A stretch of DNA of 64,000 nucleotides from Octopus sinensis (Eukaryota), in NCBI RefSeq assembly GCF_006345805.1, contig NC_043003.1, positions 51,770,001-51,834,000 on the forward strand, written 5' to 3'. A program made the position numbers and the translations under genes. The notes below the pieces were generated by a model. The model did no database searches and was not told the DNA's origin. It saw only the letters and a list, made by a program, of their open reading frames with translations. Within the stretch, counting starts at the first letter, position 1; every line of letters starts with the position of its first letter. This document shows, piece after piece, positions 3,549 through 64,000 of this stretch.

Positions 3549-3735
3549 ATATCATATAACTTCACTTCGATTTTCGCAGCAGCCATCACAGCCTGTAGGT
3601 GAAGTAACATAGACTCCACACTCAATATATTTAGTCCATTTTCTGGTGTCTGGATAATGACCTCGTACGTTGTACCACTTCCTTCACCTATCGTTTTCCT
3701 TGTATAATCCCGTTCTTTGGACAGACGACCATCTT
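3549..3735 (-). CDS. ptc: Patched coding exon, equivalent to PTCH1 exon 3 (extracellular domain 1)
   Basis: Minus strand tttctctttcatttttatcaacatgcag|AAGATGGTCGT...TATGATAT|gtaagt. Joined in phase 1 to the upstream exon (C+AA = Gln) it gives QDGRLSKERDYTRKTIGEGSGTTYEVIIQTPENGLNILSVESMLLHLQAVMAAAKIEVKLYD plus 2 nt, homologous to Patched GGR...EL.YT..KIGE......Q..IQTP....N.L.....L.HL. Length 187 bp. It is not in the ORF track because it has no start codon. Confidence 0.96.
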
Positions 3736-5154: not shown

Positions 5155-5510
5155 TAGTTTGCTAAGAAGCTTGCTTCCCAACCACATGGTTCTAGGTTCA
5201 GGCCCACTGCATGGCACCTTGGGCAAGTGTCTTCTACTATAACCTTGAGTCAACTAAAGCCTTGTAAGTGCATTTGGTAGACAGAAACTGAAAGAAGCCC
5301 ATCATAGTGTGTGTGTGTGTGTGTGTGCATGTGTGAGAGAGAGTGTGTGTCATTCATTCCCTACCACTGTCTGACAACTAGTGTAGGGTCTAATAGAGTA
5401 AGTATCAGTCTTAAAAAAAACAAAAAACTACTAGGGTTCATGACTAAAAATTCTTCAAGGCAGTGCCCCAGCATGGCCAAAGTTTAATGACTGAAATAAG
5501 TAAAAGAAAA
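5155..5510 (+). mobile_element. Family A SINE, CpG-decayed
   Basis: aagaagcttgcttcccaacc...ccttgggcaagtgtcttc...ccagcatggcc; the family CpGs appear as TG/CA. Confidence 0.85.
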
Positions 5511-6056: not shown

Positions 6057-6271
6057 GGCACAGGCGTGGCTGTGTGGTAAGAAGCTTGCTTCCCAACCAC
6101 ATGGTTTCGGGTTCAGTCCCACTGCTTGGCACTTTGGGCAAGGGTCTTCTACTATAGCCTCAGACCGACTAAAGCCTTGTGAATGGATGTGGTAGACAGA
6201 AACTGAAAGAAGCCCATCAAATTATGATGGGCTTCTTTCAGTTTCTATCTACCACATCCATTCACAAAGAT

Positions 6272-14084: not shown

Positions 14085-14280
14085 TTAGAACCCATGTTGG
14101 TGGCACGTAAAAAAGTTACATTCTTGGAGTGGTTGGCATTATGAAGAGCATCCAGCCATAGAAAGCACGAGAAATCAGACTGGAACTTGGTGTAGCTGTC
14201 CGGCTTACCAGTTACAGTCAAACTGTCTAACCCATGCCAGCATGGAAAGCAGATGCTAAATGATGATGATGATGATGATT
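14085..14280 (+). mobile_element. Family C element
   Basis: gtggttggcattatgaagagcatccagcc...atgccagcatggaaagc...(gat)n. Other copies lie at ~31020-31220 (+), ~36640 and ~38450 (+), ~38850 (-), ~48615-48800 (-), ~50970 (-) and ~59290-59500 (-). Confidence 0.8.
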
Positions 14281-15529
14281 ATATGATTACAAAAGAATTA
14301 ATGCAGGTGATTTGGGGCATGTTGGTAACATGACACCAGTGGTGGTGTTAGGGACAGTAAGCAAATCATACATTTCTTGTATCTCTCTCTTAGCCCCTAC
14401 AGATCTTTTACATTGAATGTTTGTGTATCACATTTCTTGTGCATACCTTATGCAGTCTCTTTTTTTTCAAAACAAGGGAACACAAACCTCCTGTGGATCT
14501 ACAGATCTACACAACTCCCTGAAATTCTTAAAACCCCATTATTAGTCCTTCATTGATTACACCATCACAACTAGAACCACCTGCAGTAATAATTGGTAAA
14601 ATAAACTACGAGATTACAAGTGGTAAATTGTTTGAGTAATTCCCAGACTTTATTTAATGGATGCATCTCTTTTGCTATGGACTCCTTCAGCTGATGAGAA
14701 AATATAATGGACTAACAAGAGTGCCTTTGTCTGCTTCTTTTACATTCCAGAAATCTAAGAACAGAAGACAAATCTATTTCAGATCCTATGTTTCTTAAAA
14801 AGGTTCCACTGGATAAAATAGCTCTAGACATAGACAATGTAGATAATGTTTGGTGTGAAGAAGGAGAAGGAAGAAGTCAAGTCACAGCTGGACTACTTTT
14901 TATGATAGGTCATATTATTATATTTGAAGCCTTGGACCTTTACTTTTATTCATTTATTTATTTTTCATTAATTTTTCACTCATCACTCATCAGTTCTGAG
15001 AGCCCCAAATGTTAAACAAGGAAAGTTACAGCTATGCTGATGGACTTACAAGACAATTATAAAACATCAGCAGATCATCATTATATCTTGTCACTGGCGC
15101 CTTGCTGTGTCTATGGGAAAAAAACCACAGAATTCTTGTGGTTTTAACCTAAAGTCCTATATACAACAGGATTGAATCATTCACTACTGTAAGCAGCAGC
15201 AGCACTGTAAATTTGATGTGTGTTCCATTAGCTTGCAGTACCAGCTACAACTCCCTCTGTGCATATGTTTCTCCCCACCACTCAGACAAGAGGGGGGGGG
15301 GCCGGGCAAGGGCAATGGGCTTGCAATCCACTCCTGAGAAACAAACAGATGCTATACAGGAACCAAGACCTTGGATGTGTGATAGTGGAATAACAGGGGA
15401 GAAGGGAGCAATGGTAGTTCCAGTCCCAAGTTATAAGGTGTGTGTGTGTGTGTTTGGGGGAAGGGTACTGCAGGGAGAACAGAGTGTATGTTCTTTTGAA
15501 ATGAATAAAGACTGTGGGAATGGTAAGAT

Positions 15530-17472: not shown

Positions 17473-18150
17473 TGATCTGGGTGCTATCACAGAACAATCA
17501 GGAGATTGGGGGCCATGAAATAAGAGCAGACTAAGGGCAGCAAGATCAGTCTTAAAGTCACTCAATACAATCTGGAAAGAGAGACAGAAACTAATAAGAA
17601 AAATATCAAATTAAAGATCCTGCAGACACTAGTTTGGCCTGTTGCACTGAATGAATGTGAAAGCTGAACCCTAAGGGCAAATGACTTTGCCAAACCCAAA
17701 TCCTTTGAAACAATGTGCTTCTGACTTTGCCAAACCAAAATCATTTGAAACAATGTGCTTCTGCAGCTGGACTCATTGATCAAATGAGATAGTAATTGAG
17801 GGAATGGGAGTTGAAAGAGAATTTTTGACAACTGTCAGGAAGAAAAAGCTACAGTATTTGGGCATGTCACAGCAGTCTCAGAACCTCAGTACCCACATCC
17901 TAGAGAGAGTCAATAGGAAACAGGAGAGACTGGGCAGATGCTGGCTGGATATCATAAAAGGATGGACTAGAAGATGTCTGGATGAATTCACATTCATGGT
18001 CAGAGGTGTTCGTGGAATCAATGTCATGAGAGATGACACATGTCCATGCTGCCTGATTCTCAGCAATGAGGATGGGAATAGGCAAGGCAAGGCCAAGGTG
18101 AAATGAGAGACTCAGTCAAGGCAAGGCCAAAGTGAAATGAGAGACTAATA
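17473..18150 (+). mobile_element. Decayed RTE/BovB-like LINE 3' fragment
   Basis: Interrupted peptide YLGA...KLKILQTLVWPVALNECES...FETMCF...VRKKKLQYLG...RCWLDIIKGWT, with a (CAAGG)n tail. Confidence 0.8.
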
Positions 18151-20430
18151 GAATATACTGAACTGCATTGTGAGATATATTTTAATACAGTGTGGTGGTA
18201 TGAGTAGATTACACAGAGCAGTATGGCTACAGTAGCCATAGTATAATGGTAGCTATATACATATATACACAGCTACATATCTTTGTATGTTTAACTATGA
18301 AGTCAAGAACTCAAATTCTGTGACCATCAAGGCACAAGTATGACTGTGATGAAGATAAAGACGTTCACCTTGCAGTCACATGGTTTCAGGTTCAGTTCAA
18401 CATGCAGCACTTTCTTTATCAACTTCAGCTATGACATTGAGGTCATTTGCATACATAAGTTTGCATAACAGTCAGTATGAAACTGATATGGCCTGGGAAA
18501 CTATAAACAGGAGAGAGGTTGAGAATCAAGCTCTGATGGACACCTACTTGTATGATAAATTCCTTACTAAATTCAATTTTCTATGAAGTTAATTCTTAGA
18601 TTCTTGAAATTATCCCTTCTAGTTGCTGTCAGATTTTTGCTTTCTTTCTCCAACTAAAATGCAAAATTCAATTCATTTTTCAATTCACTTATTATAAATG
18701 TACATCATTCAGTACATCACCACCTACCCAAAAATGAAAATACTATTAGTAAATGTACTTCAATTAATTCACTGAAGATGGTACAGGAGATGACTTCTAG
18801 GTGATACTGGTGTTAGTGTAGAGAACAACAATCTGAATGTCATGTCTGTTGTTTTAGCTCCAGATTAATACTGATCCAGAAGAACTGTATTCCATCTCAG
18901 ATCACTCAGTCTCTTTTTCTTAGATATAGTATGTGTCCTACTGTTGTTTTAACCCAAAGCTAAACTTTAGCCATTTGTTTTCACACATAGTGTATCTTGG
19001 GACTACAATATCGAGTCTGTTCTTCTTTTGAAAGACAGTAGAGTGATTTAAGAAGATCTATTTGATCTCATTGTTGCTTAGCATAAGGTCAGCCACCACT
19101 ATATAGACCAATAATCAAAGACCTTCTAGTTAAGAGAGCACAACATACTTCACATACTTCAAAGTCATTCTTTTAACCTTTTAGTATTTAAATTTCTGTC
19201 AAATGTAATGCTTATGTATTCATATTCTTTTGAATTAATCATGCATTTTATCTCAGAGCCTCAAGATCTTAAAGATTCTGGCCTGTTTCAACATAAAGCA
19301 AGGTAGAATATTTATCTGGGTTGGATATGGCTGGTTTAAATATTAAAGGGTTACATACAGTACAGTGTGTATTTGAGGTATTTTCTTTGCTGTTACTTTC
19401 AGCAGGTTGAACAACCATGTACAGACTGCTATTTGTGGTTGTTATTATTTAGTCTTACTGACTGAACAGACTTATGATTAAACATTCCAGCTGTGACAAT
19501 CCTGTCTTTTTACTTTGTGCAGGAAACCTAGAGCCACATTATCTGATGTGCTCTTTTCTGAGACAGTATGGTGTAATTTGGCTGTTGGGGTACCACCCAT
19601 GCCTTTTACAAGGTCTCCAGGTGGTGGTGGGTGGGTAGTGAGGCAGAAGAGAAAAACCCAAGACTCATGGATTACTGATATTCCAAAATACCCCTAGAAT
19701 GGAGATCTGTCCCACAATAGTCAGATAGATGGTGCTGCCAAACAGAATGACAAACAAAATCACCCATGAACAGGTAGAGGCTGAGAGGCTTCTTCACAGT
19801 TTCCACCAGATTTCGGTTGCCCAAGATGTTTGGTCAAGTTTCTCACACTGAAGGATTGAACATGAATTCTGGAAATATGTGGATGTGAAATGAACTTCTT
19901 AAACACACAACCTTGCTTGCACCTATGTTGATGTTGTTCAGTCCCAAGTCATCCCTAATCCAGATAAATAATGTATCTAGGACTACAATATTTCATGCCC
20001 TTCCTTACTCAAGAAGGAAATATGTGATTTCAGATAAATTTAGGTGCTATTTCTAGCAAGATGAGTGACTGTGTAGGGGCTCACTTGCAGATGTTAACAA
20101 AGTTGTTATTGTTAAGCCATGTCAGCCCTGTATGATTGTATCTATGAATAAAGACATTTAAGCAGTGACCACCCTGTCAGTAAGGAATCAATAACCACAT
20201 TATCCAACATGTCCTATTTTAAGATAGGAGGTTGTAATTTGAGGGCTGTTATTTCTTGGCCTGTCGACAGAATGATGTACAGTAGTAAGGATGGAGCAGT
20301 TATGATTGTGCTGGAGATAAATGTATGTATATTAAGGTAGTGACACCACTTATGATAATAGCAGTGATAATGACTGAGATGTGATGCATAGTATTCAACT
20401 GATAATAGTTGTCTTATAGCTCTGGTTTAG

Positions 20431-20652
20431 CCCTTTTGTTACAAACTTGGCTGAAACCAGCTCTGGCGCTATAGTACAAATGTCTTGTTTTCATGAGTTT
20501 TGAATTAAAATCTTCCACCAAACCTTAGTCCCAATTTATGTTCCTAACACTAGCTTAATTATAACTAAGTTATTTTACTAAATTCTTTGTTATATTTTTA
20601 AATAATTGAAAGAAACACAGAGCATCTCAAAATAAATACAGTAACGAAAGGG
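20431..20652 (+). mobile_element. piggyBac-like MITE, family 1, copy A
   Basis: TIRs cccttt(t/c)gttac...gtaacgaaaggg flanked by ttag/ttaa (TTAA target). Confidence 0.8.
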
Positions 20653-21159
20653 TTAACCTAGGATAAGCCTTGAGAGAGAAGGCTCATAATCAAAAGCATT
20701 CAAGATGTGACCATCCAGTTTTTTCAAGCATAGTTGTACTTCATCCAAGCACTATACGTAATAAGCTCATCATTATTTATATGTGGTTAACCAGTGTGAT
20801 TTGAGGACAATTTGTCTGTTACTTCTAGCATATTGAGCAATCATGTTAGAGAGCTCCACTGTTGGCTTTGGTTCAATAGTGGTAATTGGAATGATGAAAA
20901 CGGCTGTAGCAGCAATGATGCTCTAAGTGGTGGTGGTGGTGATGCTGGTGGTTGTACTGGGTGGTGTAAGGACGACAAGGAAAAGTGGTTCTTGTAGCCC
21001 AACAATTGGTTCAAGTTATTGGAATGTAAACTGATCTTTTTTACAACCCAGGAGGGAGAACGGGAGAAGAAAAATAAAGACAGAAAAGGAAAGCAAATAG
21101 AAAAACTTCCTTTTAGTATCCAGACAAATTGCATCCACCAAGAGTACAAAGACACGCAT

Positions 21160-21202
<43 letters not shown>

Positions 21203-22685
21203 CATCCAATGTGTATGCACATGTGCTTCAGTTTGTGCATGCATGTGTGTGTAGAAATATATATATATATATATATATATATACTTTTATCTGCAAAAAC
21301 ATTCACCATGGTGAGTATGTGAATATGTATATAATTTACTTCAAGTGGTTTGCTATGTAGCATAAGAATCAATTAATTAACCAATAAAATTAAGCTAATT
21401 AACAGCGACAACAACAACAAAATAAAGGGAAAGGCGGGGTGAGGTTTGGTAAAAACAGAACAAGAATATTCTTACTATAATAAACTAAGGTTTGTGGTTG
21501 GCACAACGTGGGTGGTTGGGTGCTGAGAAGGAAGAAATAAAGAATTGTTATCCAAAGAGCAGAAATGGGAGTGGTAGTGTGGAGAAAGAGGTTGGGGCTA
21601 AGTTTCCACTGTGTAGAATTTTTTTCATTTCTCTTTTTTTTATTATTTATTAATACCTAAAAAAGGTACTTTTTCGTTATCAATGGAAGAATAGATAGGG
21701 GGGATTATCAGTAGAGCTTAGAACTAAAAGACCCTGTCTGTTACTTGATTCTTGTTCTTTTTCCTTTTATGATCTGAATTGTAAATCCTCTTCCCAGAAG
21801 ATTAAGGGTATTATGAAAGGCCTGGTTGGAAGCCCAACCTTCTGAGTTCTTTTACAGGGCTTAAAAAAAAAAAACCTGGAAGACTATTGCAATAAGTGTG
21901 TGACTCTGAGAGGAGAATATGTTGAATAAAATTTTAATTAACTGATCCTCCTGTATTTTCTTTTATACAAAGCCAGGAACTCTTCAGCACCCCATCATAA
22001 TGTCCATTGTTGGAATCATATCAGGCTGTTGATCTCCACATCAGATGTCTGTTGATGTAGAGCGTGATTATTTTCTGTTCATGATATTGTGAATTTTGTT
22101 AGTTGAATGCCAACACAAGTAAAAAGTACAAATACAAGATTCAATTTAGCCATATTCCTCCACTAAAAATCTATTACCTTCTACCAATCATCATCACCAT
22201 CGCCAACAAGCCCTTGCATTCTCTCAAAACCATTGCTGCCTACATTGATAAGAATACTTAAAATGTATGACAATCTGTATACATGTTGCTGTATAACATG
22301 TCCAAGCCACAAGTCACCCTCAAATAAGATACATTCATACACTACCACAATATTGAGCCAATGAGGAGACTTTGATGTCATTGCAGATTGACATGCTAGA
22401 AGCAGTAGCCAAATTTCTCTTACTTCACAAACCACTGTCCTAAAAAGACAGTGATATAGTATGAGGGACTAGATTAACTGATGTAGTCCCACATACCCCT
22501 AAAATGATAGGATGGTCATGGTTGGAATGCCTGTAATCATACATCTGCTCAATCAAGACTATCCCAGAGCTACACTATGCCATCAACAAGAGGCATACAA
22601 GAACAAGCTGAAAGTGTAGCATGTCTAAGCTATTACACTGCCCTTCACGTAATAAACTTTCAGTGTGGTCCACAATCGAATAGAA

Positions 22686-25799: not shown

Positions 25800-26890
25800 C
25801 ATCATCACCATCTCTTTTCCACGCGTGTATGGATTTGACAATGTGTAAATACATGCACACACACACACACGAGGTATATGGAGGATAACAGCTGAGTAAA
25901 AGAATTGCCAGGATAGCCAAATGGAAAGGAAACTGTGAAAGGGGTAAGACAAGAGTAGAGGTGGCTAAAAGCTGACCTTAGGACGTTGAACTTCATTCGG
26001 GATTGTACTCTTCTAATGGAACGAAGAGACAGACACACAATGTGTGTCTGTGGGGGTTGCAAGTGGATACAAACACAAGTGTCTGCGTTGGCTTGAAAGT
26101 AGAAAAGATCCACATACATCCATGCACTCGTACATACATATTTTTTATTTAGGTAAACTTAGGACCGTCTTAGCAAGTATTATATAGCCTCCAGAGCTGG
26201 CAGAAACGTTAGCAACGCCGGGCGAAATGCGTTGCCGTATTTCGTCTGCCGTTACGTTCCGAGTTCAAATTCCGCCGAGGTCGACTTTGCCTCTCATCCT
26301 TCCGGGATCGATAAATTAAGTACCAGTTACGCACTGGGGTCGATGTAATCGACTTAATCCGTTTGTCTGTCCTTGTTTGTCTCCGCTGTGTTTAGCCCCT
26401 TGTGGGTAGTAAAGAATTATATATATAGCCTCCACCGGCTGAGTGTGTGTGTATGTGTAAGCGCGCGCAATGTCAGTGCATTGGACCCTATAGTGTGAAT
26501 ACATTGACAGCAAGCCATAGCATAAATAGATCGGAATTAGGCCCGTATGCCCGTAGGACTGCGCGGACCCCGGACAACTGCGCAGTGTGTACCATGTGTT
26601 AAAACGGCATTGGGTAAATTTGACTGAGGGAGATGTTTGTGCGCGCGCGAGAGAGAGAGAGACAAAGGAGGAAGAAGGGTGTGAGTGTGTATGACTAAGG
26701 AAGGCCTATGGACAAACCCCTGTTCAGATGAGAATACGTTACATACATACATACGAACATCCATACGCACATGCATACATACATACTAAATTACCATTCT
26801 AGTTAGTTGAAGACTGTTTCTCCACTTCACCTCCCCGCCTCACTCTTTCACACACGATCCTATTTTAATTCAACTTCCCTGTCCAAAATT

Positions 26891-30793: not shown

Positions 30794-32225
30794 TGAAGGT
30801 ACCTTTGTAACCCTTTTTAAGATTGTCTGAGACTATTCAAAGGAAGTTAACAGATTTTACTCAATAGCAGCAGAGTGTGCCCACCTAAAGGCAGGTGTTA
30901 CTAAAACAGGTGACAGAATAAGCCTACCACCTAAAATTACAAACCTAGGTCATTCCTGATTCTGCAAACTTATATGATCAAAGACATCCCTACTGTGACT
31001 CTTCCATTTGTTTGCATATTTATGTTTACAACTCTGGTGCTGGTGCCATGTAAAAAGTACACAGAACACTGTGTAAAGTGGTTGGCACTAGGAAGGGCAT
31101 CCAGTTGTAGAAACCATACCAAACCAGATTATGGAACTTGGAGTGGCTCCTGGTCTTGCCAGCTCCTGCCAAGCCATCCAACCTATGCCAGCATGGAAAA
31201 TGGATGTTAAATGATGATAATGAATAACCAATGTGTTCTTACAGGTTGCTGTTTTTTTTTTTTTTCAGATTATGATTCCACATTGGATCACAAAATGGTA
31301 AGGCATACACAGGTGTGAAAGGTTTGTGTTGGGATATTAGTTTTAAACTCAGTATGTCACAAATTTTAAGGTGAAAAGTGGAATTATATAGATGACATTT
31401 GATTCCATTGATTTCCAACATTGGTATTGTTTCTTTTTTATTTGTAAGCTAAGTTGACCAACCTACCAATAAAGAAAAGGTCATGAATATGTATTCATGT
31501 GTATATATTATCTATCAAAATGTATAAACATTCATATACATGCATACATGTATATCTATATATATATAAATATATACACACAGAAACATACACATGCATA
31601 CATATGCACACATGCATCCACAAATTCACACACAATCTATTGCTTTGTTAAGAAAAAAAAAAGGACAAAAAGAAAAAAGATAATTGAGATTGGAAGGGGG
31701 AAGAAGAGGAAAAAGATGAAGACACATGTGTGTTGTGTATGAAGTGGGTGAGAGGGGTAAACAGAATAAACACAAGTAAATTGATAGGAAATTACAAAAG
31801 TTGGAGAGAGAGAGAGGTGGGGTTTGTTCATCTGACAGCTATAACTTACTTCACTGGGCCCTGGGGGTGTAAGTGAGTAATGGGAGGTGGTGGTTGAGAG
31901 AGTTGGAATCTGGGTGAAGATGAAGAAGAGGAGAGGGTGGTGGAGTTGCATGGTTGGTGGTAGTGGGGAGGTGATGGGGAATCAAGTTTGTATACACATA
32001 CACAGATGTATGTGTATGTCTGTGGAGGAGGGGAACTAATTTAGTGGGTGGCCTGCTGAAGACTTACCCTGTTGGAAGTATTGGTGGCTTGTGTGTGTGT
32101 GTGTGTACATGTATCATGTATGTGTGTGTGTGAGGAGAGGGCTTGAAGAATTTTCATTCAATACCCACCACCAAGATTTTTTTTAAAGTTTTCTTTTCAA
32201 GATATATATATATATAATATATATA

Positions 32226-32269
<44 letters not shown>

Positions 32270-33170
32270 CATACATATATATATATATATTTATATATAT
32301 ATATATATTGCAACTTGCCTGTTACCCCACACAGGTCAGAATTTTGAATTTACAAAAACTGATAATAGGAAAGTAGGAAGTATAAGATCTTAAAAGAAAT
32401 CTGTAATTCCCTTGCCAAAATCCTGAAGGAAGGAAACTGAAGTTTATACACAAACACACCGATCCAATTTACTGCTTTCAAATTTTATATATATTTATTG
32501 TAAAAAGGAGACTGGATTTATCTATTTTGTGTATATATTGTATGTGTGTACAAATATATTGTGTATATATATATATGTATATCATCATTTAATGTCCATT
32601 TTCCATACATATATAATTAAATAGATATATAGATCAATTTTAATTCTCCATTTTTCTGATACATTTTTCCAATTAAAAATTATGGTCTTAATTTCATATT
32701 TGAGTTTTTAAATTCTAATTTTTGTGGGTGGGGTGAAATTTTGCTTTTCAAGCAGGTGTAAAACAAGTACATCACCTCTTATTTGTATGTTTACCTTATT
32801 CTGCCCATCCACATATGTTTATGTACCTGTCCACATTTCACTCTTATCAACCCATATTTTAAATATATAAAACAAAAATGTTAAAAAAAAAAAAAAACCA
32901 ATCCTCCTCCTAAAGGGAATTTAGGAAGTTCTCTTTCTTTTATAAATATTACAAATTTTAGGGTGCGTTTCGTGTGTGTTAGATTAGATATTCTATGGGT
33001 GGGCTATCAGATTTACAGTTTTTTTCTCTTCTTTTTATTTTAAAATATGGGTGGGTAATGGGTAGAAATGTTTATGAGTGAGCATAAGTAACTGCTGTAC
33101 CCATTAAATACATACTATTACTCACAACACATTGTGTGTGTGTGTGTGTGTATGCATTTATGTATATTCC

Positions 33171-33744: not shown

Positions 33745-35773
33745 CTATGTATCTTATATATATGTGCATAATTATGGTCACTACTGAGAGGGAACTCAAT
33801 ATTTTTATAAGCAGAAAGCATCTGTATTTCCAACCACTGACTCCCCTAAGAACCATCCATATATGAATACACATACATACCTGTTACACACACATGCACA
33901 CACACTGTTACTAGTGACAGGTCACACTATGAAAAATGTTATTACTAGTTTATATGGATTTAATAAATAAGTTACATCTCTAAGTATTTAATAGCTAAAT
34001 AATTATTATTGTTATTAATAACATATATTTATTGCAACTATACAAATGAGATATTTACTTCATTTCTATTTCAATTTAAAACTGTTTTTATTTTGAAAAT
34101 TTGAATTAATTTCAAACATTTGTACAAGTAGCAAAAAATTTGGAAAAAAAATGTAAAATTTGATAATTACTGTGTGTATCTTAATCCAATATTACCCACA
34201 GTGGCAAAAGTATATTGTCAACATTATCAGTCATAAGCTCATGCCTGGGTGTTCTTCCTGACACTAACCTTTCCTGTTTTTTCAAGTGAAGTACTATAGT
34301 CCCACACATTTGCACAGTGAACTGTTAGCAGATGACTTGTTTATGGAAGACCTAAATCATGTCACTGTTGAAGCAATGCTAATATGAAGACTACCCTTAC
34401 AGTACCGCCATAAACACACATGACAAACATCCTGCAACTAAATTTCACTTACATTAACACTGATCATCTCAATGCTATAGTAGAGGACTGGCTCCCAAAC
34501 CACATGGCAAACTCATGTGTACCAAACAGCCAAATACAATGAATGGCAGAATCCCTTTTAGATTTTCTTAAATCCAGCCCAGCGTAACTTTGTTTTCATC
34601 CTTAGGACAATGAAACAACACACCAATTTGAAACCAGGTTCAACCTCACTGAACAACATCTTGAGCAAGCATTTTCTAATGCAAGTGTCCTGTGCCTAAC
34701 CAATGCTTTGTGAGTGTGTGTGTGTGTATGTGCGCATGTCTTTGTGTTTGCATTCCAACAGTCCACAGGTAATTTTATCAACTGCAGAAGTATGAAAAAT
34801 AAAATTGATCGCAGTGTGATTTGAACTTGCAAAAGGGGCTAGAATGAATACTGCAAGCATATGTTCAGCAGATGCTTTGCCTGGTCAAGGAATTGAAACT
34901 GACCTATGTCTGTTGAGTTCAAACCCAAACCAACACAAATTATATATATATATATATATATATATAGTTTAAAGAGAGAGAGGTGGGTGAACAGATAATA
35001 TAACCTTTTAAGCTAAGGGTGGGACTAGCTGGTTCCATTCACACTTTTGAGTCTTGTTCTAAGAAAAAAAAGTCATAGCTGCCACCACCACAACCATCAC
35101 CATCATTCATAGCTCTCTCTCTCTCTCTTTCTTTCTCTCTCTCTTCTTTCTATCACCAGCTTCTACCCAGTTTCAAACATTATTAGAGTGACACCACACA
35201 CATGATCAGATACTCCACTGGTGCTTTCACCACCACTGCCGGCACCATCACCATTTTACTTGAAGCTTGCTATTCTGAGTAAATAGAGTTAAAGGAGAAA
35301 GAGGGAAAGAGAGACAGAGTGAGAGAGAGAGAGAAAGAAAAAAAAAAACTAGAATGTTTGGAGGTAGGGGTGGGATAACTTAAAGTGGAGTGGTGTTATT
35401 GATTAGGGTGGGGAAGCAGCTGGAGGAAGACAGAGTATGAGGATGAGGGATGAAGAAGTAGGGGAGGGGGTGCTGGTATGTAGAAGAAAACAGAAATGAG
35501 GAGAAATGGCGGCAGTAGTGATAGTGGTAATGGTAGAGGAGGAAGTGGAAGTAGTGGATGCAATAGGGGTGGGGTGAGTACACAATGTAGAAGAGAGAGA
35601 GAGAGAGGGTGTGTATATGTGTGTGTCAGAGTAGAAGAAAAGTGGGAGCAGGGGGTCGTAGTGGGGTAGGGTAGAGAGAATGCTGGGAGAGTGCACCCAA
35701 GCAAAGGGGTGAGGGTAGTGTGAAGGAAGGAGAAAAGTGAAGGAAGGCAGCTTCCACCCACAACCAGAAAACA

Positions 35774-35782
35774 GACCACCCA
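35774..35782 (+). promoter_or_regulatory. Perfect Gli/Ci consensus site GACCACCCA (copy 1)
   Basis: Exact 9-mer inside an intron of a canonical Gli target gene; two more CACCCA cores lie within 90 bp. Function is inferred. Confidence 0.5.
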
Positions 35783-37585
35783 GCTCTGTATGTATGTGTA
35801 ACATTATATGTGTGAGCGTACATGTGTGTGTATGTGTGTGTGTGTGTGTCATATGTATATACAGTTGGAATAAACAAAGATGCTAAGAGAAATAAAACAA
35901 TAAAACTTAGATGAAATAAAGAATTTTTGGTAAATTTTATAGATATTTTTGATTTTGTTTTGAAGTTTTCTCATTTCACTATGACTAAAGAGAGAGAGAA
36001 AAGAGAGAGAAAGAAAGGGAGAGAGAGTGTGAGCCCTGTGTGGCTGAGTGTGTGAGAGAGGTGTGTGGCTGGAAGCTTACTGAGGGGGAAGCAAACATAT
36101 TGTTAATACAGCATACACCACCAACACCATTGCCACCACCACCACCACCACTACTACTACTACTAGTACAACTACTACCACTACTACTATGATCAAGACA
36201 TTCACCTAGCAAATCCTCCTTCACTTCCACCTCTGTCATCATCGTCATCATCATTGTTGCTGCCACCACCATCACTGGTTATTACACACCTCCTCTGCAA
36301 ATTTTTATCTTTCTCACAGTTGCCCCGCATGTGGTAAAGAAATTTGTTTCACAACAATGTGACCCCAGGTTTGATTCCACTGAGAAGCACCTTTGGGGTA
36401 AATATTTTCTGCCAGAGCTTTGGGTCAATTGAAGTGGAATTTGGTTGACAAGAACTGCACAGAAGAGCCTCCATATATTATGTGTTGGAACGTGTCAAAA
36501 TTGTGAGGATATTTGGTTGGAAACTGATGAGGGAGTTGGGCTTGTCTGCATCTGTTGTGTTTTTTCTCTTGTTTTTCCATAAATCCCACTGTTGTCCCCT
36601 TGTGCCATATTTCCATTATGCATGCATGATATACATACATAACTGAGAAACCATGCCAAATCAGAATGGAATCTGGTGCATCCCCTCAGCTCACCAACCC
36701 TGGTCAAACTGTCCAACTCATGCCAGCATGGGCAATGAACATTAAATGATGATGATATATATATATATATATATATATAGTTTAAAGAGAGAGAGGTGGG
36801 TGAACAGATAATATAACCTTTTAAGCTAAGGGTGGGACTAGCTGGTTCCATTCACACTTTTGAGTCTTGTTCTAAGAAAAAAAAGTCATAGCTGCCACCA
36901 CCACAACCATCACCATCATTCATAGCTCTCTCTCTCTCTCTTCTTTCTCTCTCTCTTCTTTCTATCACCAGCTTCTACCCAGTTTCAAACATTATTAGAG
37001 TGACACCACACACATGATCAGATACTCCACTGGTGCTTTCACCACCACTGCCGGCACCATCACCATTTTACTTGAAGCTTGCTATTCTGAGTAAATAGAG
37101 TTAAAGGAGAAAGAGGGAAAGAGAGACAGAGTGAGAGAGAGAGAGAAAGAAAAAAAAAAACTAGAATGTTTGGAGGTAGGGGTGGGATAAACTTAAAGTG
37201 GAGTGGTGTTATTGATTAGGGTGGGGAAGCAGCTGGAGGAAGACAGAGTATGAGGATGAGGGATGAAGAAGTAGGGGAGGGGGTGCTGGTATGTAGAAGA
37301 AAACAGAAATGAGGAGAAATGGCGGCAGTAGTGATAGTGGTAATGGTAGAGGGAGGAAGTGGAAGTAGTGGATGCAATAGGGGTGGGGTGAGTACACAAT
37401 GTAGAAGAGAGAGAGAGAGGGTGTGTATATGTGTGTGTCAGAGTAGAAGAAAAGTGGGAGCAGGGGGTCGTAGTGGGGTAGGGTAGAGAGAATGCTGGGA
37501 GAGTGCACCCAAGCAAAGGGGTGAGGGTAGTGTGAAGGAAGGAGAAAAGTGAAGGAAGGCAGCTTCCACCCACAACCAGAAAACA

Positions 37586-37594
37586 GACCACCCA
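37586..37594 (+). promoter_or_regulatory. Perfect Gli/Ci consensus site GACCACCCA (copy 2)
   Basis: Duplicate of the 35774 site. Confidence 0.5.
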
Positions 37595-38564
37595 GCTCTG
37601 TATGTATGTGTAACATTATATGTGTGAGCGTACATGTGTGTGTATGTGTGTGTGTGTGTGTCATATGTATATACAGTTGGAATAAACAAAGATGCTAAGA
37701 GAAATAAAACAATAAAACTTAGATGAAATAAAGAATTTTTGGTAAATTTTATAGATATTTTTGATTTTGTTTTGAAGTTTTCTCATTTCACTATGACTAA
37801 AGAGAGAGAGAAAAGAGAGAGAAAGAAAGGGAGAGAGAGTGTGAGCCCTGTGTGGCTGAGTGTGTGAGAGAGGTGTGTGGCTGGAAGCTTACTGAGGGGG
37901 AAGCAAACATATTGTTAATACAGCATACACCACCAACACCATTGCCACCACCACCACCACCACTACTACTACTACTAGTACAACTACTACCACTACTACT
38001 ATGATCAAGACATTCACCTAGCAAATCCTCCTTCACTTCCACCTCTGTCATCATCGTCATCATCATTGTTGCTGCCACCACCATCACTGGTTATTACACA
38101 CCTCCTCTGCAAATTTTTATCTTTCTCACAGTTGCCCCGCATGTGGTAAAGAAATTTGTTTCACAACAATGTGACTCCAGGTTTGATTCCACTGAGAAGC
38201 ACCTTTGGGGTAAATATTTTCTGCCAGAGCTTTGGGTCAATTGAAGTGGAATTTGGTTGACAAGAACTGCACAGAAGAGCCTCCATATATTATGTGTTGG
38301 AAGGTGTCAAAATTGTGAGGATATTTGGTTGGAAACTGATGAGGGAGTTGGGCTTGTCTGCATCTGTTGTGTTTTTTCTCTTGTTTTTCCATAAATCCCA
38401 CTGTTGTCCCCTTGTGCCATATTTCCATTATGCATGCATGATATACATACATAACTGAGAAACCATGCCAAATCAGAATGGAATCTGGTGCATCCCCTCA
38501 GCTCACCAACCCTGGTCAAACTGTCCAACTCATGCCAGCATGGGCAATGAACATTAAATGATGA

Positions 38565-38611
<47 letters not shown>

Positions 38612-40699
38612 GTCTGTGTTTGTGTTCATGCTGGTCTGAACAGTTGTAGACTGGAATACATATAGATGGCCAAATAAACCATACAGCCATCAACTAAAAA
38701 CTATAATGTTTACCTTAATAAACACTGTAAATTAGTCAAAATACTAGTCTGATGGTGAGTTAAGGAGAGTAGTGAGTGATTTATTAAAATTATAGCATCA
38801 TCATTATTGTTTTACTGTCCCATTTTACCATTTTCTACTGCTGCATGCCCTTCCTGTCACCAACCCTTGGCTGATTCTAAGCAAAGTAATATTTCCAATG
38901 GCCAGATATGTTTACACAGAAGACTGGAAATGAAGGACATTATATATATGACGGTGATACTCATTTACAACCATCATACAATGTAGAAACAAAGGGGCAT
39001 ATACATATACATACAGGCATACCACCCATCTCTTTTTATTGTGTAACTTTGTGCCAGTGTCAGAAAGCAATATTGTCTTAGCTGACATCAACTCTGCTCC
39101 TTATCCATCCTTCTACTCCATCTTTTCCACATTAAACAAATAACATCCATGTTCGGTATGATATCTCTCACCACTAAAGGAGCCTCCACATAGTTACTTA
39201 GCTTGCTAGTAGTAGCAGGCAAGATTTTTGAAATTTAACCTCAACTGTAGTTATATGTGAGAAATGGAATGGTCACAGCTATGTCTGGTCATAAAGCCAA
39301 CACAGTCAGATTAAATGGAAACAACTTTTAGGAGTCTTTATGAATGTAGGTCAAGACATATTTAAAAAAAAAAGGCAGGATAGTCACAATACAAAGACCT
39401 TTGATTATATGTGTTTCATTGAGTTTCTGAAAGGTTCCAAATTTCGGGGAGTGGGTGGGAGGTGAGACTCCTTAAATCTGTGTCAACCCATTGGTTGTCA
39501 TTCAAGGTGTACATGTATATTGAAGGGTGAGAGTGGTAGCTTATTCCAGCCAAGATAATTGAGGTATAATCACCTAAGCTGCTCAACAACGGCAACAACA
39601 ATAACAAAAAAATGATTTATCTGATTGTGCAACCTGCAAGAATTAGTGGTCAAATATTCCTAAAATCATATTCTACCATCTTCAAAACAGAAAGGTTGGA
39701 CACATTGGAAAATGTAATTTTAGATATACAAGGAAAATGAGATGGTCATAAATGGAATGATTATGGGTCAACTCAATTAGTAAAGAAGTGGGACTAAACA
39801 ACAACAGTAATAGCAGACAAAACGTAACCAATGCTCTCAAAGGTGAATTAGATATTTAAGCAATCAAAAGTTGACTATAACATATTAATTCAGACTACAA
39901 TCAGAGCAACAAGCATGTCACTCTAGGAACCTCCAAATAAATGTATAACCACCTGAAGTAGGAAATTAATTAATAGGTAAGGAACGAACAATATTGTAGA
40001 TTAGGTCACCATTAGTTTTTACACAAGGAGTGTATGAATAATCTACAATTGTTCATAATGACAACACATATCTGTGCATGTATGAGTATATATATATATA
40101 TATAAATGCTTAGAGAGCTCCTTAGAAGAAGTAGTTAGCTTCTGATACCTAGGTGATCTAATTAGCAGCGGAGAAGGTGTCTTTTGAAAGCTTAGTAACT
40201 TAAGAATGGAGAGGACCTCACAATGGCAATGACAATAATCCTCAAAAAGTGGTGAGACATGGAAGGAGAGATGTAAAATGATTACATGTCCATACATAGA
40301 CACTGAGTGTACTGAGTAATTGTGAGCACAGCTTGGTGTCCTGCAAGATGATCATAGCAAGCAGAGCAAAATATCCAAGTCAACTGGCATTTGTTAGTTT
40401 TAGGTAGTCGTGGCATTATTATTGTTCAGTGGTAGATTTCGTAATTGTGGTCAGTCCAGGAGACTTCTGGCATGAAAATAAATCCAATATATGAAAATTT
40501 CAATTTCCTCAGAGTTCATATACCATGCTCGTTCAGAATATGTAGGTGTAACTATATATGATGTACCATCACTCAGTTTGATCTGAGGCCGCCTTTGACT
40601 GTTTAAACATTTGTAACACTTGTTTTTATATGAGTGTAATATTATAAGGTATGTAATAATATGGAGTGCAGTATGTAGACATAAAGGTCTCTTCTTCTT

Positions 40700-41300
40700 G
40701 TCTTGAGACAGCATTCGCCCGGGGTGGGTCGAGCTGGCTTCAATCATCCTCAATGCTGCATTTCTCACAAACGCCAACCAGACCTGGCGATTTGAGGCTA
40801 ACAACCACGTGATCTCAAACCATTCCTTATTCCAGCGGCGAACGCCATAGATATGGGGGCCTAGGTTGGGCTCCGGATAAGCCTTGACTGTCATCAGCCA
40901 GGTTTTTCGTTGTCCACCACATTGCTTTCGCCAACCCTGAAGGGGAGCTGGGGCAATTGCTTCGTAGATGAATTCTCCTGGTTGACGACAGAGGGCATGA
41001 CCCAGCCAACGCAGACATCTCGTTAGGATGACTTGCCGGAGGGAGGTGATTTTGCACTGGTGTTGCATCGAATTGCTGGAGACAAGGTGATGCCATTGGA
41101 CACGAAGAATGCGGCATAGACAGAGGTGATCAAAGGATTCTAGTCGCTTAATATCTTCCACCCTCATCAGCCATGACTTGCTACCGTAAAGGAGAATCGT
41201 CCGCACTAGTGCTTAGTAGATCTACTTTGGTGGTGCATCGGATCTGAGATCTGAGACATAAAGGATCCAGTGTGGAACTCTGATTGTGGTGCATGATCCC
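40700..41300 (-). mobile_element. 5'-truncated RTE-clade LINE (post-RT C-terminal region)
   Basis: ORF 40451..41206 contains RTILLYGSKSW...FDHLCLCRIL...LRWLGHALCR...GGQRKTW, followed by a (CAAGA)-like tail. The ORF reads on beyond the element into flanking DNA. Confidence 0.88.
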
Positions 41301-44554: not shown

Positions 44555-44950
44555 TACCGCATCGACTGGCCTCCGTGCTGTGGGCACGTAACAAGCACCA
44601 TCCGATCGTGGCCGTTTGCCAGCCTCATCTGGCACCTGTGTCGGTGGCACATAAAAACACCATCCGAGCGTGGCCGTCTGCCAGCCTCGTCTGGCACCTG
44701 TGTCGGTGGCACATAAAAAACACCATCCGCGCGTGGCCGTTTGCCAGCCTCGTCTGGCACCTGTGTCGGTGGCACATAAAATCACCCACTACACTCTCGG
44801 AGTGGTTGGCGTTAGGAAGGGCATCCAGCTGTAGAAACACTGCCAGATCTGACTGGACTGGTGCAGCTTTCGGGCTCCCCAGACCCCAGTTGAACCGTCC
44901 AACCCATGCTAGCATGGAAAGCGGACGTTAAATGATGATGATGATGATGA

Positions 44951-44951
<1 letters not shown>
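44555..44951 (+). mobile_element. SINE-like family C (ATG tail) with a triplicated internal 62-63-bp unit
   Basis: gtggttggcgttaggaagggcatccagc...catggaaagcggacgttaa(atg)n; three units at 44596, 44658 and 44721. Confidence 0.85.
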
Positions 44952-45005
<54 letters not shown>

Positions 45006-48018: not shown

Positions 48019-49624
48019 GGGTGCCTTTTGATAACAACTCCTGGAAGTAAGAAGGATTTAAAAAAAAGTTATCTCAATGGAAATTGAACTCAAAATGTGA
48101 AAAAAGCCTGTAACTAAATGCTGCAAGTAATTAGTCTTGCACTCCATTGCTTCTGCGAGTGAACCCACAGAAGCATAAAAAAAGAAAAAGAAAAAAAAGT
48201 CAAATTTAAACAGTAATTTGCTAATTAGTATGTTCAATGCTTCCTTACTTATGGGATACAGTACAATTTGTAGAGACACACACACATTTTACAGATATGC
48301 ATACACACATACAGAAAAAAGAACAAGAAAATGTGGTTTTGGTGAAGACCAACCCTACTGAAACAAATTAAGTAAGACTACCAAGTTCATTAAAAAAAAC
48401 TGCTGCTGTCACCCACAACCGCTACCATCCAACTACCACCCTTCTGAACATCACTACCACCCAGTGCCTACTACTTCCACCTGCCAACCAAGCTGGTACA
48501 AATACAACCACCAACACTGACACCATTAATGTCATATTTCTCAACTATAAAACATAGTCTCAAAAACTTTAAATATTACTTGTTAGTAAAGAGTTTTAAT
48601 TGCTGAATTTAATAATCATCATCATTTAATGTCTGTTTTCTATGCTGGCAGGGGTTGGACAGTTTGACAGGAGCTGGCCAGCCAGTGAGCCACCCGGGCT
48701 CCAATTTGTCTATTTTGGTATGGTTTCTATTGCTGGATGCCCTTTCTATTGCCAACCACTTTACAGAGTGTACTGGGAGCTTTTTATGTGGCACCAATAC
48801 CAGTAATAATAATTTTCTGTAATTTAGGCACAAGTCAATTTTGATGAGGGCTGGGGGAGTAGTCAATATCATTGACCCCAGCACTTAATTTATCAACCCT
48901 AAAAAAGATGAAGGCTGACTGTGGCAGAATTTGAATACAAAATGTTGAGTTGGAATAAATACTGCAAAACATTAATTCTATTGTTCTGATGATTCAGTCA
49001 GTTTACCATTTTAATAAAAATTTAGGAAGTCTTTGTTTAGCAAATGTTCTACATTTGATACTATAGCATGGGATTGTGGCCAGGTGTTTTCTGTAATCTT
49101 CAAATGAGGAATACCTTGTGAGTGGAATAAAGTAGTCAGAAACTTTGCAGAAGCCCTTTATGTTTGTGTGTGTATGTGGGCTGGTATTTGTGCCTGTACA
49201 TGTGGGTGCAATTGTGTGTATATTTAAAACTGATGTAAAATTTAGTGTTAACAATGTGTCTTTTTATGTCACATAACTTTATAATTGAATGATTTCACAA
49301 ATATTGATTGCTAAAATAATATCAAATTGAAATAAATAGAGGGAGTGATATGGTCGTCTAAAACTTTGAAGGTAGTGTCTCAGCACGGTTGCTGTTCAGT
49401 GATTTAAAAAGAGTACATTAAAAAGTTGCAATTACATACATGCATGCAACTGCACTGTCTTAATGCAGCTACATCATGGCACTAGTAATTGTATATTGGT
49501 GGGTTGTCATTTTCTTTATTTTAACTTTTTTTTTTTGGTTTTGCTATTTTTACATACGTGCATACATACATTATATGAATGTGTTTATTCCTGTTTCTTT
49601 GTTTTGGTATTATTCTTTTTATTC

Positions 49625-58795: not shown

Positions 58796-58988
58796 GCTCA
58801 ACCCAGAGCTGTTCAACGTTGGTTTCTAACGTGCCTGTTTTCAAACCGAAGCAAAACAAAGAGAGCAGCAGTAATCCAAGGAAAAGAACTTTGCCATAAT
58901 GAAGTTGGATAAAACAGCCAACGCTGAAAAGTTGTTTCTGTAGGTGACATCGCACCCACAGAGCACATGTGTTTCCATTAGATTTACC
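58796..58988 (-). CDS. ptc: Patched (Hedgehog receptor) internal coding exon, equivalent to PTCH1 exon 2 (TM1 and start of extracellular domain 1)
   Basis: Minus strand reads (T/C)n-cag|GGTAAATCT...TGGGTTGAGC|gtaagt. It translates GKSNGNTCALWVRCHLQKQLFSVGCFIQLHYGKVLFLGLLLLSLFCFGLKTGTLETNVEQLWVE plus 1 nt, matching the Patched GK..G...LW.R..Q..LF..GC.IQ...GK.L..GL......GLK...LETNVE.LWVE signature. Length 193 bp, phase 0 in and phase 1 out, as I recall for human PTCH1 exon 2. Confidence 0.97.
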
Positions 58989-59519
58989 CTGAAAGAAAGA
59001 AAAAAAAAAGAAAAATACTTAGAAAAATATATTATATATAAAAATTCAATTATATTTCCAAATTTTCATTGTTAACAATTTTCTAATAATAAATACAGTA
59101 TTGATTATATTTTGATAAATAAAATTAAATAAGGCTTATAAGTAAAACAAAATCCTATGTCATAGGATGTTGGAGGCTCTTCTTCCCGCCAGCCCTCACC
59201 TGTTTTCAAGCAAGGTGCTATTTCTAACATGGCTGGACATGTCTCACGGGGACGTTCATTTTGTATCTATGGCGTGATGTCAAGACAAGGAGACACACGA
59301 ATACACAAATATACGTATGTCATTCATTTCCCATATTCTGCGAAAACATGTTTGGCTGAGGGGAATTAACACCCAGCTTGGAAATGAGTGGAGGTTGACA
59401 ACAGGAAAAGCATCCGAGGCCGTAGAAAAGTTGCATCGATAAACTCTGTCCAACTCGCGCAAGCATGGAAAAGTGGACATTAAAATGATGATGATGATTT
59501 ACATATTCATTTTCCATTA

Positions 59520-63363: not shown

Positions 63364-63699
63364 GGGTGGAGTCCATATGTTTTGCTACACTTGGCTAGCA
63401 AATATATATAAAGTTACACAAAGTCACTGTTAAATGTTTGCGTTTTATAACTTTATAAAACCATTGGCAATAAATATTGTAAATTAGACATAGCAAGAGC
63501 TAAACACACACAATGAAAAAACCACCACCTAAGCACCAACTTTTAAGTCCACGCAAATATGAATAAATAATACGTGAAAATGTGTATATTTAAAAGTTAT
63601 TTTGATGCTTATATAGGGCTTAAAATATATATTTATGTACTTTATATGGTTTTAATGTATAAATCACCTTGTGATGCACGTGTGTGTGTGTGTGGGGGG

Positions 63700-64000
63700 G
63701 ATTCAGACGAACATATTCCGCTGGATGTGTAATGTCAACATGCATGAACGATGGAGCACATTTGAGATGGGGGGGAGTATAAGAGGAATCAGCTGTAGTG
63801 TGCACGAGAGAAGATTGCGCTGGTACGAACATGTGGTACGTTTGAAGGATAACAGTTGTGTAAAAAGTGTTTCAAGCAACCCAGTATAAAGGAGATTGCA
63901 GAAGAGGAAGATCGTTAAAGATGTTGGAAGGTGTGGTGAAATTTGATCTCAGGAAGGCGAAGTCAAGACTACTACGAGTGACAAGATGCTGGGAAAAAAA
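63700..64000 (+). mobile_element. RTE-clade LINE fragment
   Basis: Peptide FRWMCNV...ERRLRWYEHVVRL matches the RTE LRWMCG...ERRLRWYGHV.R motif. It runs off the window. Confidence 0.75.

What the first reader, a model, noticed from the sequence alone, without database searches (positions are those of the whole stretch)
34967..38592. A 1.8-kb tandem duplication in the ptc intron doubles the window's only perfect Gli/Ci site
Seen: two near-identical head-to-tail copies (about 6 differences by eye) with (AT)n tracts exactly at both borders and at the junction, which points to unequal exchange between microsatellites. Each copy holds an exact GACCACCCA (35774, 37586) with TTCCACCCA 22 bp upstream and GTGCACCCA ~80 bp upstream, inside an otherwise C-poor purine tract. 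Known: ptc/PTCH1 is the classic direct Gli/Ci target in Hedgehog negative feedback. Inference: this is a very recent, possibly polymorphic, copy-number change of a Hedgehog-response enhancer driven by microsatellites. Caveats: most differences are indels in runs, so an assembly artefact joining two haplotypes at an (AT)n tract is a real alternative. One independent perfect 9-mer in 64 kb is only mildly unexpected (rough expectation 0.1-0.2).
Basis: partly seen in the sequence, partly recalled or inferred. Interest (0 to 1): 0.75.

Follow-up and report, generated by a model that had tools for sequence, protein, structure and literature searches.

The report
Microsatellite-bounded tandem duplication in patched intron
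A 1.8-kb piece of a long intron of the Hedgehog-receptor gene patched is present as two nearly identical head-to-tail copies joined at (AT)n microsatellites; this is ordinary young structural variation, and the Gli-binding motif it doubles is no more than chance would place there.

Summary
Two copies (34967-36779 and 36780-38591) differ by 2 substitutions and 4 short indels in runs. Perfect (AT)n tracts lie at the left border, the junction and the right border. The window's only exact GACCACCCA is therefore present twice. The host gene is patched: two minus-strand exons match PTCH1 residues 58-184 (E=4e-33), and the duplication lies in the 55-kb intron between them. The junction and right-border (AT)n grow out of the (ATG)n tail of a dispersed SINE-like repeat. 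(AT)n covers only 0.86% of the window, so breakpoints in three such tracts are not a coincidence. This points to exchange or template switching between two microsatellites. The Hedgehog-enhancer reading is not supported beyond plausibility. One exact 9-mer is expected in 25-33% of comparable sequences, near-consensus sites are not enriched against permuted-motif controls, and the three-site cluster is only mildly unusual and was chosen after seeing it. No comparative, accessibility or read data could be reached. An assembly artefact remains possible (about 0.2), but no gap separates the copies and the 64 kb is gap-free. Verdict: a real-looking, very recent, most likely neutral tandem duplication. 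A functional copy-number change of a Gli element is an untested minority possibility.

The parts
34941..34966 (.). Left-border microsatellite (TA)13
   Evidence: TRF, 100% matches; sequence read.
34967..36779 (+). Copy A of the duplicated unit (1813 bp), including its terminal (AT)12.5
   Evidence: Local alignment of the two copies; direct-repeat families with spacing 1812/1813.
36755..36779 (.). Junction microsatellite (AT)12.5. It follows the (ATG)3 tail of the SINE-like repeat of copy A and runs directly into the first base of copy B.
   Evidence: As single-stranded DNA it folds into a weak hairpin, as expected for a self-complementary tract (12 of 200 shuffles fold as well).
36780..38591 (+). 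Copy B of the duplicated unit (1812 bp)
   Evidence: 2 substitutions and 4 run indels relative to copy A.
38567..38608 (.). Right-border microsatellite (AT)21
35774..35782 (+). Exact Gli/Ci consensus GACCACCCA, copy A
37586..37594 (+). Exact Gli/Ci consensus GACCACCCA, copy B (same site, duplicated)
35752..35760 (+). Degenerate Gli-like site TTCCACCCA (2 mismatches at positions 1-2). Its copy-B counterpart is at 37564-37572.
   Evidence: offset 1812.
35691..35699 (+). Degenerate Gli-like site GTGCACCCA (2 mismatches at positions 2-3). Its copy-B counterpart is at 37503-37511.
35340..35800 (+). G-rich purine tract with repeated GGGTGGG(G) boxes. It contains a canonical G-quadruplex motif at 35644-35671 (copy B: 37456-37483).
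   Evidence: Composition; CACCC/GGGTG positions; G4 regex.
36646..36754 (+). 3' part of a dispersed SINE-like repeat ending in (ATG)n (copy B: 38458-38566). Its tail seeds the junction and right-border (AT)n.
   Evidence: BLAST to 14160-14270, 31109-31221, 44833-44992, 48668-48615, 59446-59506 and 32606-32541. In the alignment, 3 of 7 copies continue into (AT)n.
36337..36507 (+). Old, diverged repeat fragment (copy B: 38149-38319). Both substitutions between the copies fall here.
   Evidence: 63% identity to 5164-5337 (E=1e-9); weaker match to 50074-49930.
58796..58988 (-). patched exon (193 nt) encoding transmembrane helix 1 and the LETNVEQLWVE motif. It forms the upstream boundary of the host intron.
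   Evidence: AG/GT splice sites read directly; PDB PTCH1 match.
3549..3735 (-). Next patched exon (187 nt) encoding the start of extracellular domain 1. It forms the downstream boundary of the host intron (intron 58795-3736, 55,060 nt).
   Evidence: The joined peptide matches PTCH1 residues 58-184, E=4e-33.

Best explanation
A 1.81-kb stretch of non-coding DNA in a 55-kb intron of the patched orthologue of a repeat-rich animal genome was duplicated in tandem very recently. The genome looks cephalopod-like, but that was not verified with a tool.

Before the event the unit was bounded by two (AT)n microsatellites. The left one is free-standing. The right one grew out of the (ATG)n tail of a SINE-like repeat. 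Either unequal exchange between these two short identical tracts, or a break or stalled fork in a hairpin-prone (AT)n followed by re-priming in the other tract, produces exactly the observed structure: (AT)n-unit-(AT)n-unit-(AT)n.

The unit is mostly low-complexity sequence and old repeat debris. It contains one exact and two degenerate Gli/Ci-type motifs. Their presence is compatible with chance, so the duplication is most likely selectively neutral and possibly still polymorphic.

Shown: the structure, the borders, the host gene and the repeat content. Inferred: the mechanism, the young age and the neutrality.
For: - Structure: two copies with 2 substitutions and 4 run indels in 1812 bp. There are exactly two copies, and this is the only long near-identical direct repeat in the 64 kb.
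- Borders: perfect (AT)n at all three boundaries. Perfect (AT)n of at least 16 bp covers only 549 bp, or 0.86% of the window, so breakpoints landing in them by accident is about a 1e-4 event.
- Origin of the tracts: the junction and right-hand tracts continue the (ATG)n tail of a dispersed repeat whose other copies also run into (AT)n. (AT)n is self-complementary; the junction tract folds into a weak hairpin.
- Host gene: verified as patched.
- Against an artefact: there is no N anywhere in the window, although it crosses 21 (AT)n tracts and many other microsatellites. This suggests a long-read contig in which a 3.6-kb structure is spanned by single reads. Ko et al. list gaps between the copies and more divergent haplotypes as hallmarks of false duplications (PMC9516828). 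Neither is seen here.
- Against function: the Gli motif statistics are compatible with chance. The unit holds no Rfam family, no tRNA and no credible ORF.
Against: - No reads, depth or second assembly could be examined, so the two-copy state is attested only by this one sequence.
- Four of the six differences are 1-2 bp run-length changes. These could be consensus errors, so true divergence may be even lower. That fits a very young duplication and a homotype false duplication equally well.
- If the source species has very low heterozygosity (0.08% is reported for O. bimaculoides, PMC9795677), 0.11% divergence is also what two haplotypes would show.
- Neutrality is an assumption. patched is the one gene where a Gli site has a high prior of mattering. 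Clusters of Ci/Gli sites at known Hedgehog targets validated in 4 of 5 cases in flies, although those were also required to be conserved and outside repeats (PMC4692483).
Confidence: 0.6

Rival explanations
1. Assembly artefact. The locus has one copy of the unit. Two haplotypes or two error-laden read groups were laid end to end because the aligner lost register in the (AT)n tracts, or a gap-closing step filled an overlap as if it were a gap.
For: - Low-complexity (AT)n at every boundary is also where assemblers and gap closers fail.
- Four of six differences are run-length indels typical of consensus errors.
- 0.11% substitution divergence is within reported octopus heterozygosity, 0.08-1.1% (PMC9795677).
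- False duplications adjacent to the original on the same scaffold are documented (PMC9516828).
Against: - No N gap lies between the copies or anywhere in the 64 kb, whereas gaps between the pair are a listed hallmark of false duplications.
- The whole structure is 3.6 kb, shorter than typical long reads, so a long-read consensus would carry the copy number seen in the reads.
- False heterotype duplications favour regions where haplotypes are more divergent than average. Here the copies are 99.9% identical in substitutions.
- No other such duplication occurs in the window.
Confidence: 0.2
2. Functional copy-number gain of a Hedgehog-response element. The cluster at 35691-35782 is a genuine Gli-bound module of patched, and the duplication doubles its dose and alters negative feedback.
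For: - patched is a direct Gli/Ci target in flies and mice, with many dispersed enhancers including intronic ones. The fly intronic module 1EH has one optimal site plus low-affinity sites (PMC4887206).
- Patched expression follows Hh in cuttlefish limb buds (PMC6581508).
- The exact site has two core-retaining degenerate sites within 83 bp. This arrangement appeared in at most 1 of 400 shuffles and at 3.6% of random positions.
- Ci/Gli clusters at known Hedgehog target loci validated in 4 of 5 cases (PMC4692483).
Against: - One exact site is expected in 25-33% of such windows.
- Near-consensus sites are not enriched against permuted motifs.
- Hexamer clusters of this kind are common in this sequence, at 21%.
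- The statistic was chosen after seeing the data.
- The motifs sit at the edge of a G-rich low-complexity tract flanked by (TG)n and (AG)n. That is the kind of repeat-associated cluster that Gurdziel et al. excluded before testing.
- Site clusters alone validated in only 23% of cases.
- Mutating the single optimal site of the fly intronic module had little effect.
- No conservation or chromatin data exist here.
Confidence: 0.13

Closest known systems
Tandem segmental duplication by unequal exchange or template switching between short direct repeats (microsatellite- or microhomology-mediated copy-number variants)
   Same: Head-to-tail copies, near identity, the same simple repeat at both outer borders and at the junction, and no extra sequence at the junction.
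   Different: The homology tracts are only 25-42 bp of (AT)n. That is much shorter than the repeats that usually support non-allelic homologous recombination. A break-and-re-prime route at fragile, hairpin-forming (AT)n is therefore at least as likely as classical unequal crossing-over (my inference from general knowledge). One of the tracts derives from a SINE tail.
Gli/Ci-responsive enhancers of patched/Ptch1 (fly ptc-prox with three optimal sites, fly intronic 1EH, mouse intronic limb module; Lorberbaum et al. 2016, PMC4887206)
   Same: The same gene, an intronic position, and an optimal GACCACCCA accompanied by weaker sites within about 90 bp.
   Different: No evidence of activity, binding, accessibility or conservation. 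There is only one high-affinity site, embedded in low-complexity sequence, and its occurrence is statistically compatible with chance.
False (heterotype or homotype) duplications in genome assemblies (Ko et al. 2022, PMC9516828)
   Same: Near-identical adjacent copies bounded by hard-to-align sequence, with differences dominated by run-length indels.
   Different: No assembly gap between the copies. The copies are very similar rather than unusually divergent. The structure is shorter than a long read. Depth and k-mer evidence could not be tested.

Membership tests
Tandem duplication bounded by microsatellites | Two or more head-to-tail copies with high identity and no intervening unique sequence | tested here: met
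   1813 and 1812 bp, 2 substitutions and 4 indels; copy B starts at the base after copy A.
Tandem duplication bounded by microsatellites | The same simple repeat at the left border, the junction and the right border | tested here: met
   (TA)13, (AT)12.5 and (AT)21. (AT)n covers only 0.86% of the window.
Tandem duplication bounded by microsatellites | The two-copy state is present in the organism's DNA (reads, depth, PCR) | not testable with these tools
   No reads or second assembly are available. The public collections searched held no matching DNA or ORFs.
patched / PTCH gene (host locus) | Exons encode a protein specifically matching Patched | tested here: met
   the 127-aa joined exon peptide matches PTCH1 residues 58-184, E=4e-33, and all 13 hits are Patched. 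The splice sites and the shared split codon were read. Only 2 exons lie in the window, so the full-length gene was not seen.
Gli/Ci-responsive enhancer | Contains Gli/Ci binding motifs | tested here: met
   One exact GACCACCCA and two 2-mismatch sites that keep the CACCCA core.
Gli/Ci-responsive enhancer | Motif occurrence or density exceeds the background expectation | tested here: inconclusive
   Exact site P=0.25-0.33. Sites with at most 1 mismatch: P=0.01 against shuffles but 0.14 against permuted motifs. Local three-core cluster: 0.05-0.11 against shuffles, 0.21 empirically. The post-hoc composite is about 0.01-0.03.
Gli/Ci-responsive enhancer | Sequence conservation of the sites in related species | not testable with these tools
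   No cephalopod or other molluscan genomic DNA was reachable.
Gli/Ci-responsive enhancer | Gli occupancy, open chromatin, and Hedgehog- and site-dependent reporter activity | not testable with these tools
   Experimental.
False assembly duplication | A gap (Ns) between the duplicated pair on the same scaffold | tested here: not met
   the window contains only A, C, G and T. The criterion comes from PMC9516828.
False assembly duplication | Half or very low read depth and haplotype-specific k-mers over each copy | not testable with these tools
   No read data.

The most novel reading that the evidence does not exclude
The duplication is real and segregating. The 35691-35782 cluster is a working Gli-bound module of a cephalopod patched gene. 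Microsatellite-driven copy-number change would then tune the strength of Hedgehog negative feedback between individuals. That would be a natural dosage allele of a signalling-feedback enhancer, created by a SINE-tail microsatellite.
Probability: 0.08. Interest if true: 0.6.

Novelty: new member of a known kind. Interest (0 to 1): 0.25.

Why it matters
As it stands, this is a clean textbook example of how microsatellites, here one seeded by a SINE tail, generate kilobase-scale tandem duplications in a repeat-rich genome. It is also a useful flag for assembly quality control at this locus.

It would matter more only if the doubled motif cluster proved to be a functional Gli element. No Hedgehog-responsive cis-element has been described in a lophotrochozoan patched gene in the papers I could search. 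A natural one-copy versus two-copy polymorphism would then be a ready-made test of enhancer dosage in Hedgehog feedback. Nothing in the sequence currently raises that above a modest prior.

Tried and rejected
1. External DNA or protein evidence all came back empty.
   - The joined patched exon peptide found nothing in the 5.8-billion-protein collection.
   - Ten ORFs from the unit, its junction and its flanks are not in the collection.
   - Two exact-pattern scans of metagenome contigs for the motif cluster and another unique part of the unit found nothing.
   - A scan of viral contigs for the SINE-like tail found nothing.
   - Conservation and independent attestation of the junction therefore could not be tested.
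2. Pfam on the 127-aa exon peptide gave no family because the peptide is too short. Identity was established against PDB PTCH1 instead.
3. The unit is not a known RNA gene, tRNA-bearing element or coding sequence. There are no Rfam hits at gathering score and no tRNAs. ORFs inside it are low-complexity translations.
4. The unit is not an LTR pair or a multi-copy element within the window. Only its last 110-135 bp and a diverged 170-bp fragment match other places in the window, and there is no internal region between the copies.
5. Apparent enrichment of Gli-like sites was rejected. There are 19 sites with at most 1 mismatch against 10.5 in shuffles (P=0.01), and five of them lie in 19591-21509 (P=0.007). 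Letter-permuted motifs on the real sequence reach the same counts in 14% and 8-9% of cases.
6. The low CpG observed/expected ratio of the unit (0.09 against 0.39 for the window) was set aside. I attribute it to Gs and Cs lying in separate strand-asymmetric blocks (my reading of the composition table, not tested).
7. Three ORFs that look to me like retrotransposon tails (40451-41206, 17804-18106, 63671-63889) gave no Pfam match.
Full report
**1. What is in the sequence**

Tandem Repeats Finder, the repeat finder and a gapped local alignment agree. Window 34967-36779 (1813 bp) is repeated head to tail at 36780-38591 (1812 bp).
- The alignment stops at the outer borders, so there are exactly two copies.
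- The copies differ by two substitutions: 36364 C / 38176 T and 36491 C / 38303 G.
- They also differ by four indels, each a length change of a short run: a T in a CT run, AA/AAA, GG/GGG and one AG unit of an (AG)n.
- The 770 bp from 35594 to 36363 are identical in both copies.
- Perfect (AT)n tracts sit at the left border ((TA)13, 34941-34966), at the junction ((AT)12.5, 36755-36779) and at the right border ((AT)21, 38567-38608).
- No other long near-identical direct repeat exists in the 64 kb.

**2. Where it is**

I then read the two exons directly on the minus strand.
- Exon 58988-58796 (193 nt) is preceded by a polypyrimidine tract and AG and followed by GTAAGT.
- Exon 3735-3549 (187 nt) runs from CAG to GTAAGT.
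- They share a split codon. The joined 127-residue peptide matches solved PTCH1 structures over residues 58-184 with E=4e-33, and all 13 hits are Patched.

The duplication therefore lies inside a 55,060-nt patched intron. In the transcript's direction it is about 20 kb downstream of the exon that encodes transmembrane helix 1. The taxon is not established by any tool. The SINE-like repeats and microsatellite load look octopus-like to me, but that is recollection, not a test.

**3. Anatomy of the unit**

Reading left to right:
- about 145 bp of unique sequence;
- a (CT)n block and an (AG)n block;
- a 450-bp G-rich purine tract (74-76% purine, 4-10% C) studded with GGGTGGG(G) boxes and one canonical G-quadruplex motif (35644-35671);
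- the three CACCCA-containing motifs at 35691, 35752 and 35774;
- a (TG)n tract, an AT-rich stretch, another (AG)n and trinucleotide low complexity.

The last third is repeat debris.
- 36337-36507 is 63% identical to a repeat at 5164-5337.
- 36646-36754 is the 3' part of a dispersed SINE-like family with at least six other copies in the window.
- The alignment of those copies shows a conserved end, …CCAACCCATGCCAGCATGGAAAA..GACATTAAATGATGATGAT. An (ATG)n tail follows and, in three of seven copies, continues into (AT)n.

So the junction and right-border (AT)n tracts are outgrowths of a SINE tail. The unit holds no Rfam family, no tRNA and no credible ORF.

**4. How it arose**

Perfect (AT)n of at least 16 bp occupies 549 bp, or 0.86% of the window. 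Two independent random breakpoints both falling in such tracts is a roughly 1e-4 event, so the tracts are part of the mechanism.

The ancestral state (AT)n-unit-(AT)n yields the observed (AT)n-unit-(AT)n-unit-(AT)n in either of two ways:
- by unequal exchange between the left tract of one chromatid and the right tract of the other;
- by a break or stalled fork in one tract followed by re-priming in the other.

(AT)n is self-complementary, and the junction tract folds into a weak hairpin. The tracts are only 25-42 bp long. I therefore consider the break-and-re-prime route at least as likely as classical crossing-over. This is inference from general knowledge of (AT)n fragility.

Divergence of 2 in 1812 (0.11%) makes the event very recent, unless gene conversion keeps the copies alike. 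Reported octopus heterozygosity ranges from 0.08% to about 1% (PMC9795677). In a species at the high end, a neutral duplication this young would probably still be polymorphic (inference).

**5. Real or artefact?**

I could not reach reads or a second assembly.

Indirect evidence favours a real duplication.
- The window has no N at all while crossing 21 (AT)n tracts and many other microsatellites. This suggests a long-read contig, in which a 3.6-kb structure would be spanned by single reads.
- Ko et al. list gaps between the copies and unusually divergent haplotypes as characteristics of false duplications (PMC9516828). Neither applies here.

Against that, low-complexity borders are where assemblers and gap closers slip, and four of the six differences look like consensus errors. 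I put the artefact at about 0.2.

**6. The Gli site**

GACCACCCA occurs only at 35774 and 37586, which is one independent site. I tested significance on a single-copy version of the window with copy B removed.
- **Exact site.** At least one exact site appears in 27-33% of dinucleotide-preserving shuffles, at three block sizes. It also appears for 24.8% of the 504 letter permutations of the motif scored on the real sequence.
- **Near-consensus sites.** Sites with at most one mismatch number 19 against 10.5 ± 3.3 in shuffles (P=0.01). However, 13.7% of permuted motifs do as well.
- **Core cluster.** Three CACCCA cores within 100 bp occur in 5-11% of shuffles. In the real sequence, 21% of equally abundant hexamers form such clusters.
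- **Composite.** A perfect site with two or more further cores within 100 bp appeared in at most 1 of 400 shuffles. It appears at 3.6% of random real positions and at 9.5% of permuted-motif hits. This gives a joint probability near 0.01-0.03, for a statistic defined after seeing the data.

Biological prior:
- patched is a direct Gli/Ci target with many dispersed enhancers, some of them intronic, in flies and mice (PMC4887206).
- Patched expression tracks Hh in cuttlefish limb buds (PMC6581508).
- In flies, Ci/Gli site clusters alone validated in 23% of cases. They validated in 80% only at known targets, after filtering for conservation and against repeats (PMC4692483).
- Mutating the single optimal site of the fly intronic module had little effect.

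Here the motifs sit at the edge of a low-complexity tract between microsatellites, and conservation is unknown. I estimate about 0.2 that the cluster is a functional Gli element.

**7. Comparison with what is known, and verdict**

The structure belongs to a familiar class: tandem copy-number variants generated at short direct repeats. Membership is met on the two sequence criteria and untestable on physical existence. It resembles patched/Ptch1 Gli enhancers only in gene, position and motif content. The defining functional features could not be tested, and the enrichment test is inconclusive. It fails the one testable hallmark of a false duplication, a gap between the copies.

The finding is a correct and well-described observation of an ordinary event. 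The attractive regulatory interpretation is not excluded but is unsupported. Interest 0.25; novelty: new member of a known kind.

Noticed in passing
window 19591-21509: Five one-mismatch Gli-like sites lie within 1.9 kb of the same patched intron: TACCACCCA, GACCACCCT, GACCATCCA, CACCACCCA(-) and AACCACCCA(-). This is rare in shuffles (P about 0.007), but 8-9% of letter-permuted motifs reach it on the real sequence, so it is not significant.
   Followed up: yes
window 35644-35671 and 37456-37483: A canonical G-quadruplex motif (GGGAGCAGGGGGTCGTAGTGGGGTAGGG) lies about 100 bp upstream of the Gli motif in each copy. Only one other such motif occurs in the whole window, at 15292-15319.
   Followed up: partly
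window 14160-14270, 31109-31221, 44833-44992, 48615-48668(-), 59446-59506, 32541-32606(-), plus 36646-36754 and 38458-38566: A dispersed SINE-like repeat family with a conserved 3' end (…CCAACCCATGCCAGCATGGAAAA..GACATTAAATGATGATGAT) and an (ATG)n tail that often continues into long (AT)n. It appears to be a source of AT microsatellites in this genome.
   Followed up: partly
window 40451-41206 (-), 17804-18106 (+), 63671-63889 (+): ORFs whose sequences (for example …RLESFDHLCLCRILRVQWHHLVS…LRWLGHALC…) look to me like the C-terminal tails of non-LTR retrotransposon ORF2 proteins. Pfam found nothing, so this rests on recollection only.
   Followed up: partly
window 58796-58988 (-) and 3549-3735 (-): The two patched exons are 193 and 187 nt long and are separated by a 55-kb intron. 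As far as I remember (not checked), these sizes are the same as, or within one codon of, the corresponding human PTCH1 exons. That would imply conserved exon boundaries despite a very large intron expansion.
   Followed up: no
window 34967-36779: The CpG observed/expected ratio of the unit is 0.09, against 0.39 for the window. This is probably a by-product of G-rich and C-rich blocks lying apart rather than a methylation signal.
   Followed up: no
window 5157-5311 / 6072-6226 and 2362-2512 / 26215-26365: Two further pairs of direct repeats of about 150 bp, at 85% and 93% identity. These are presumably other copies of dispersed short repeats. The first pair is related to the old fragment inside the unit.
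   Followed up: no
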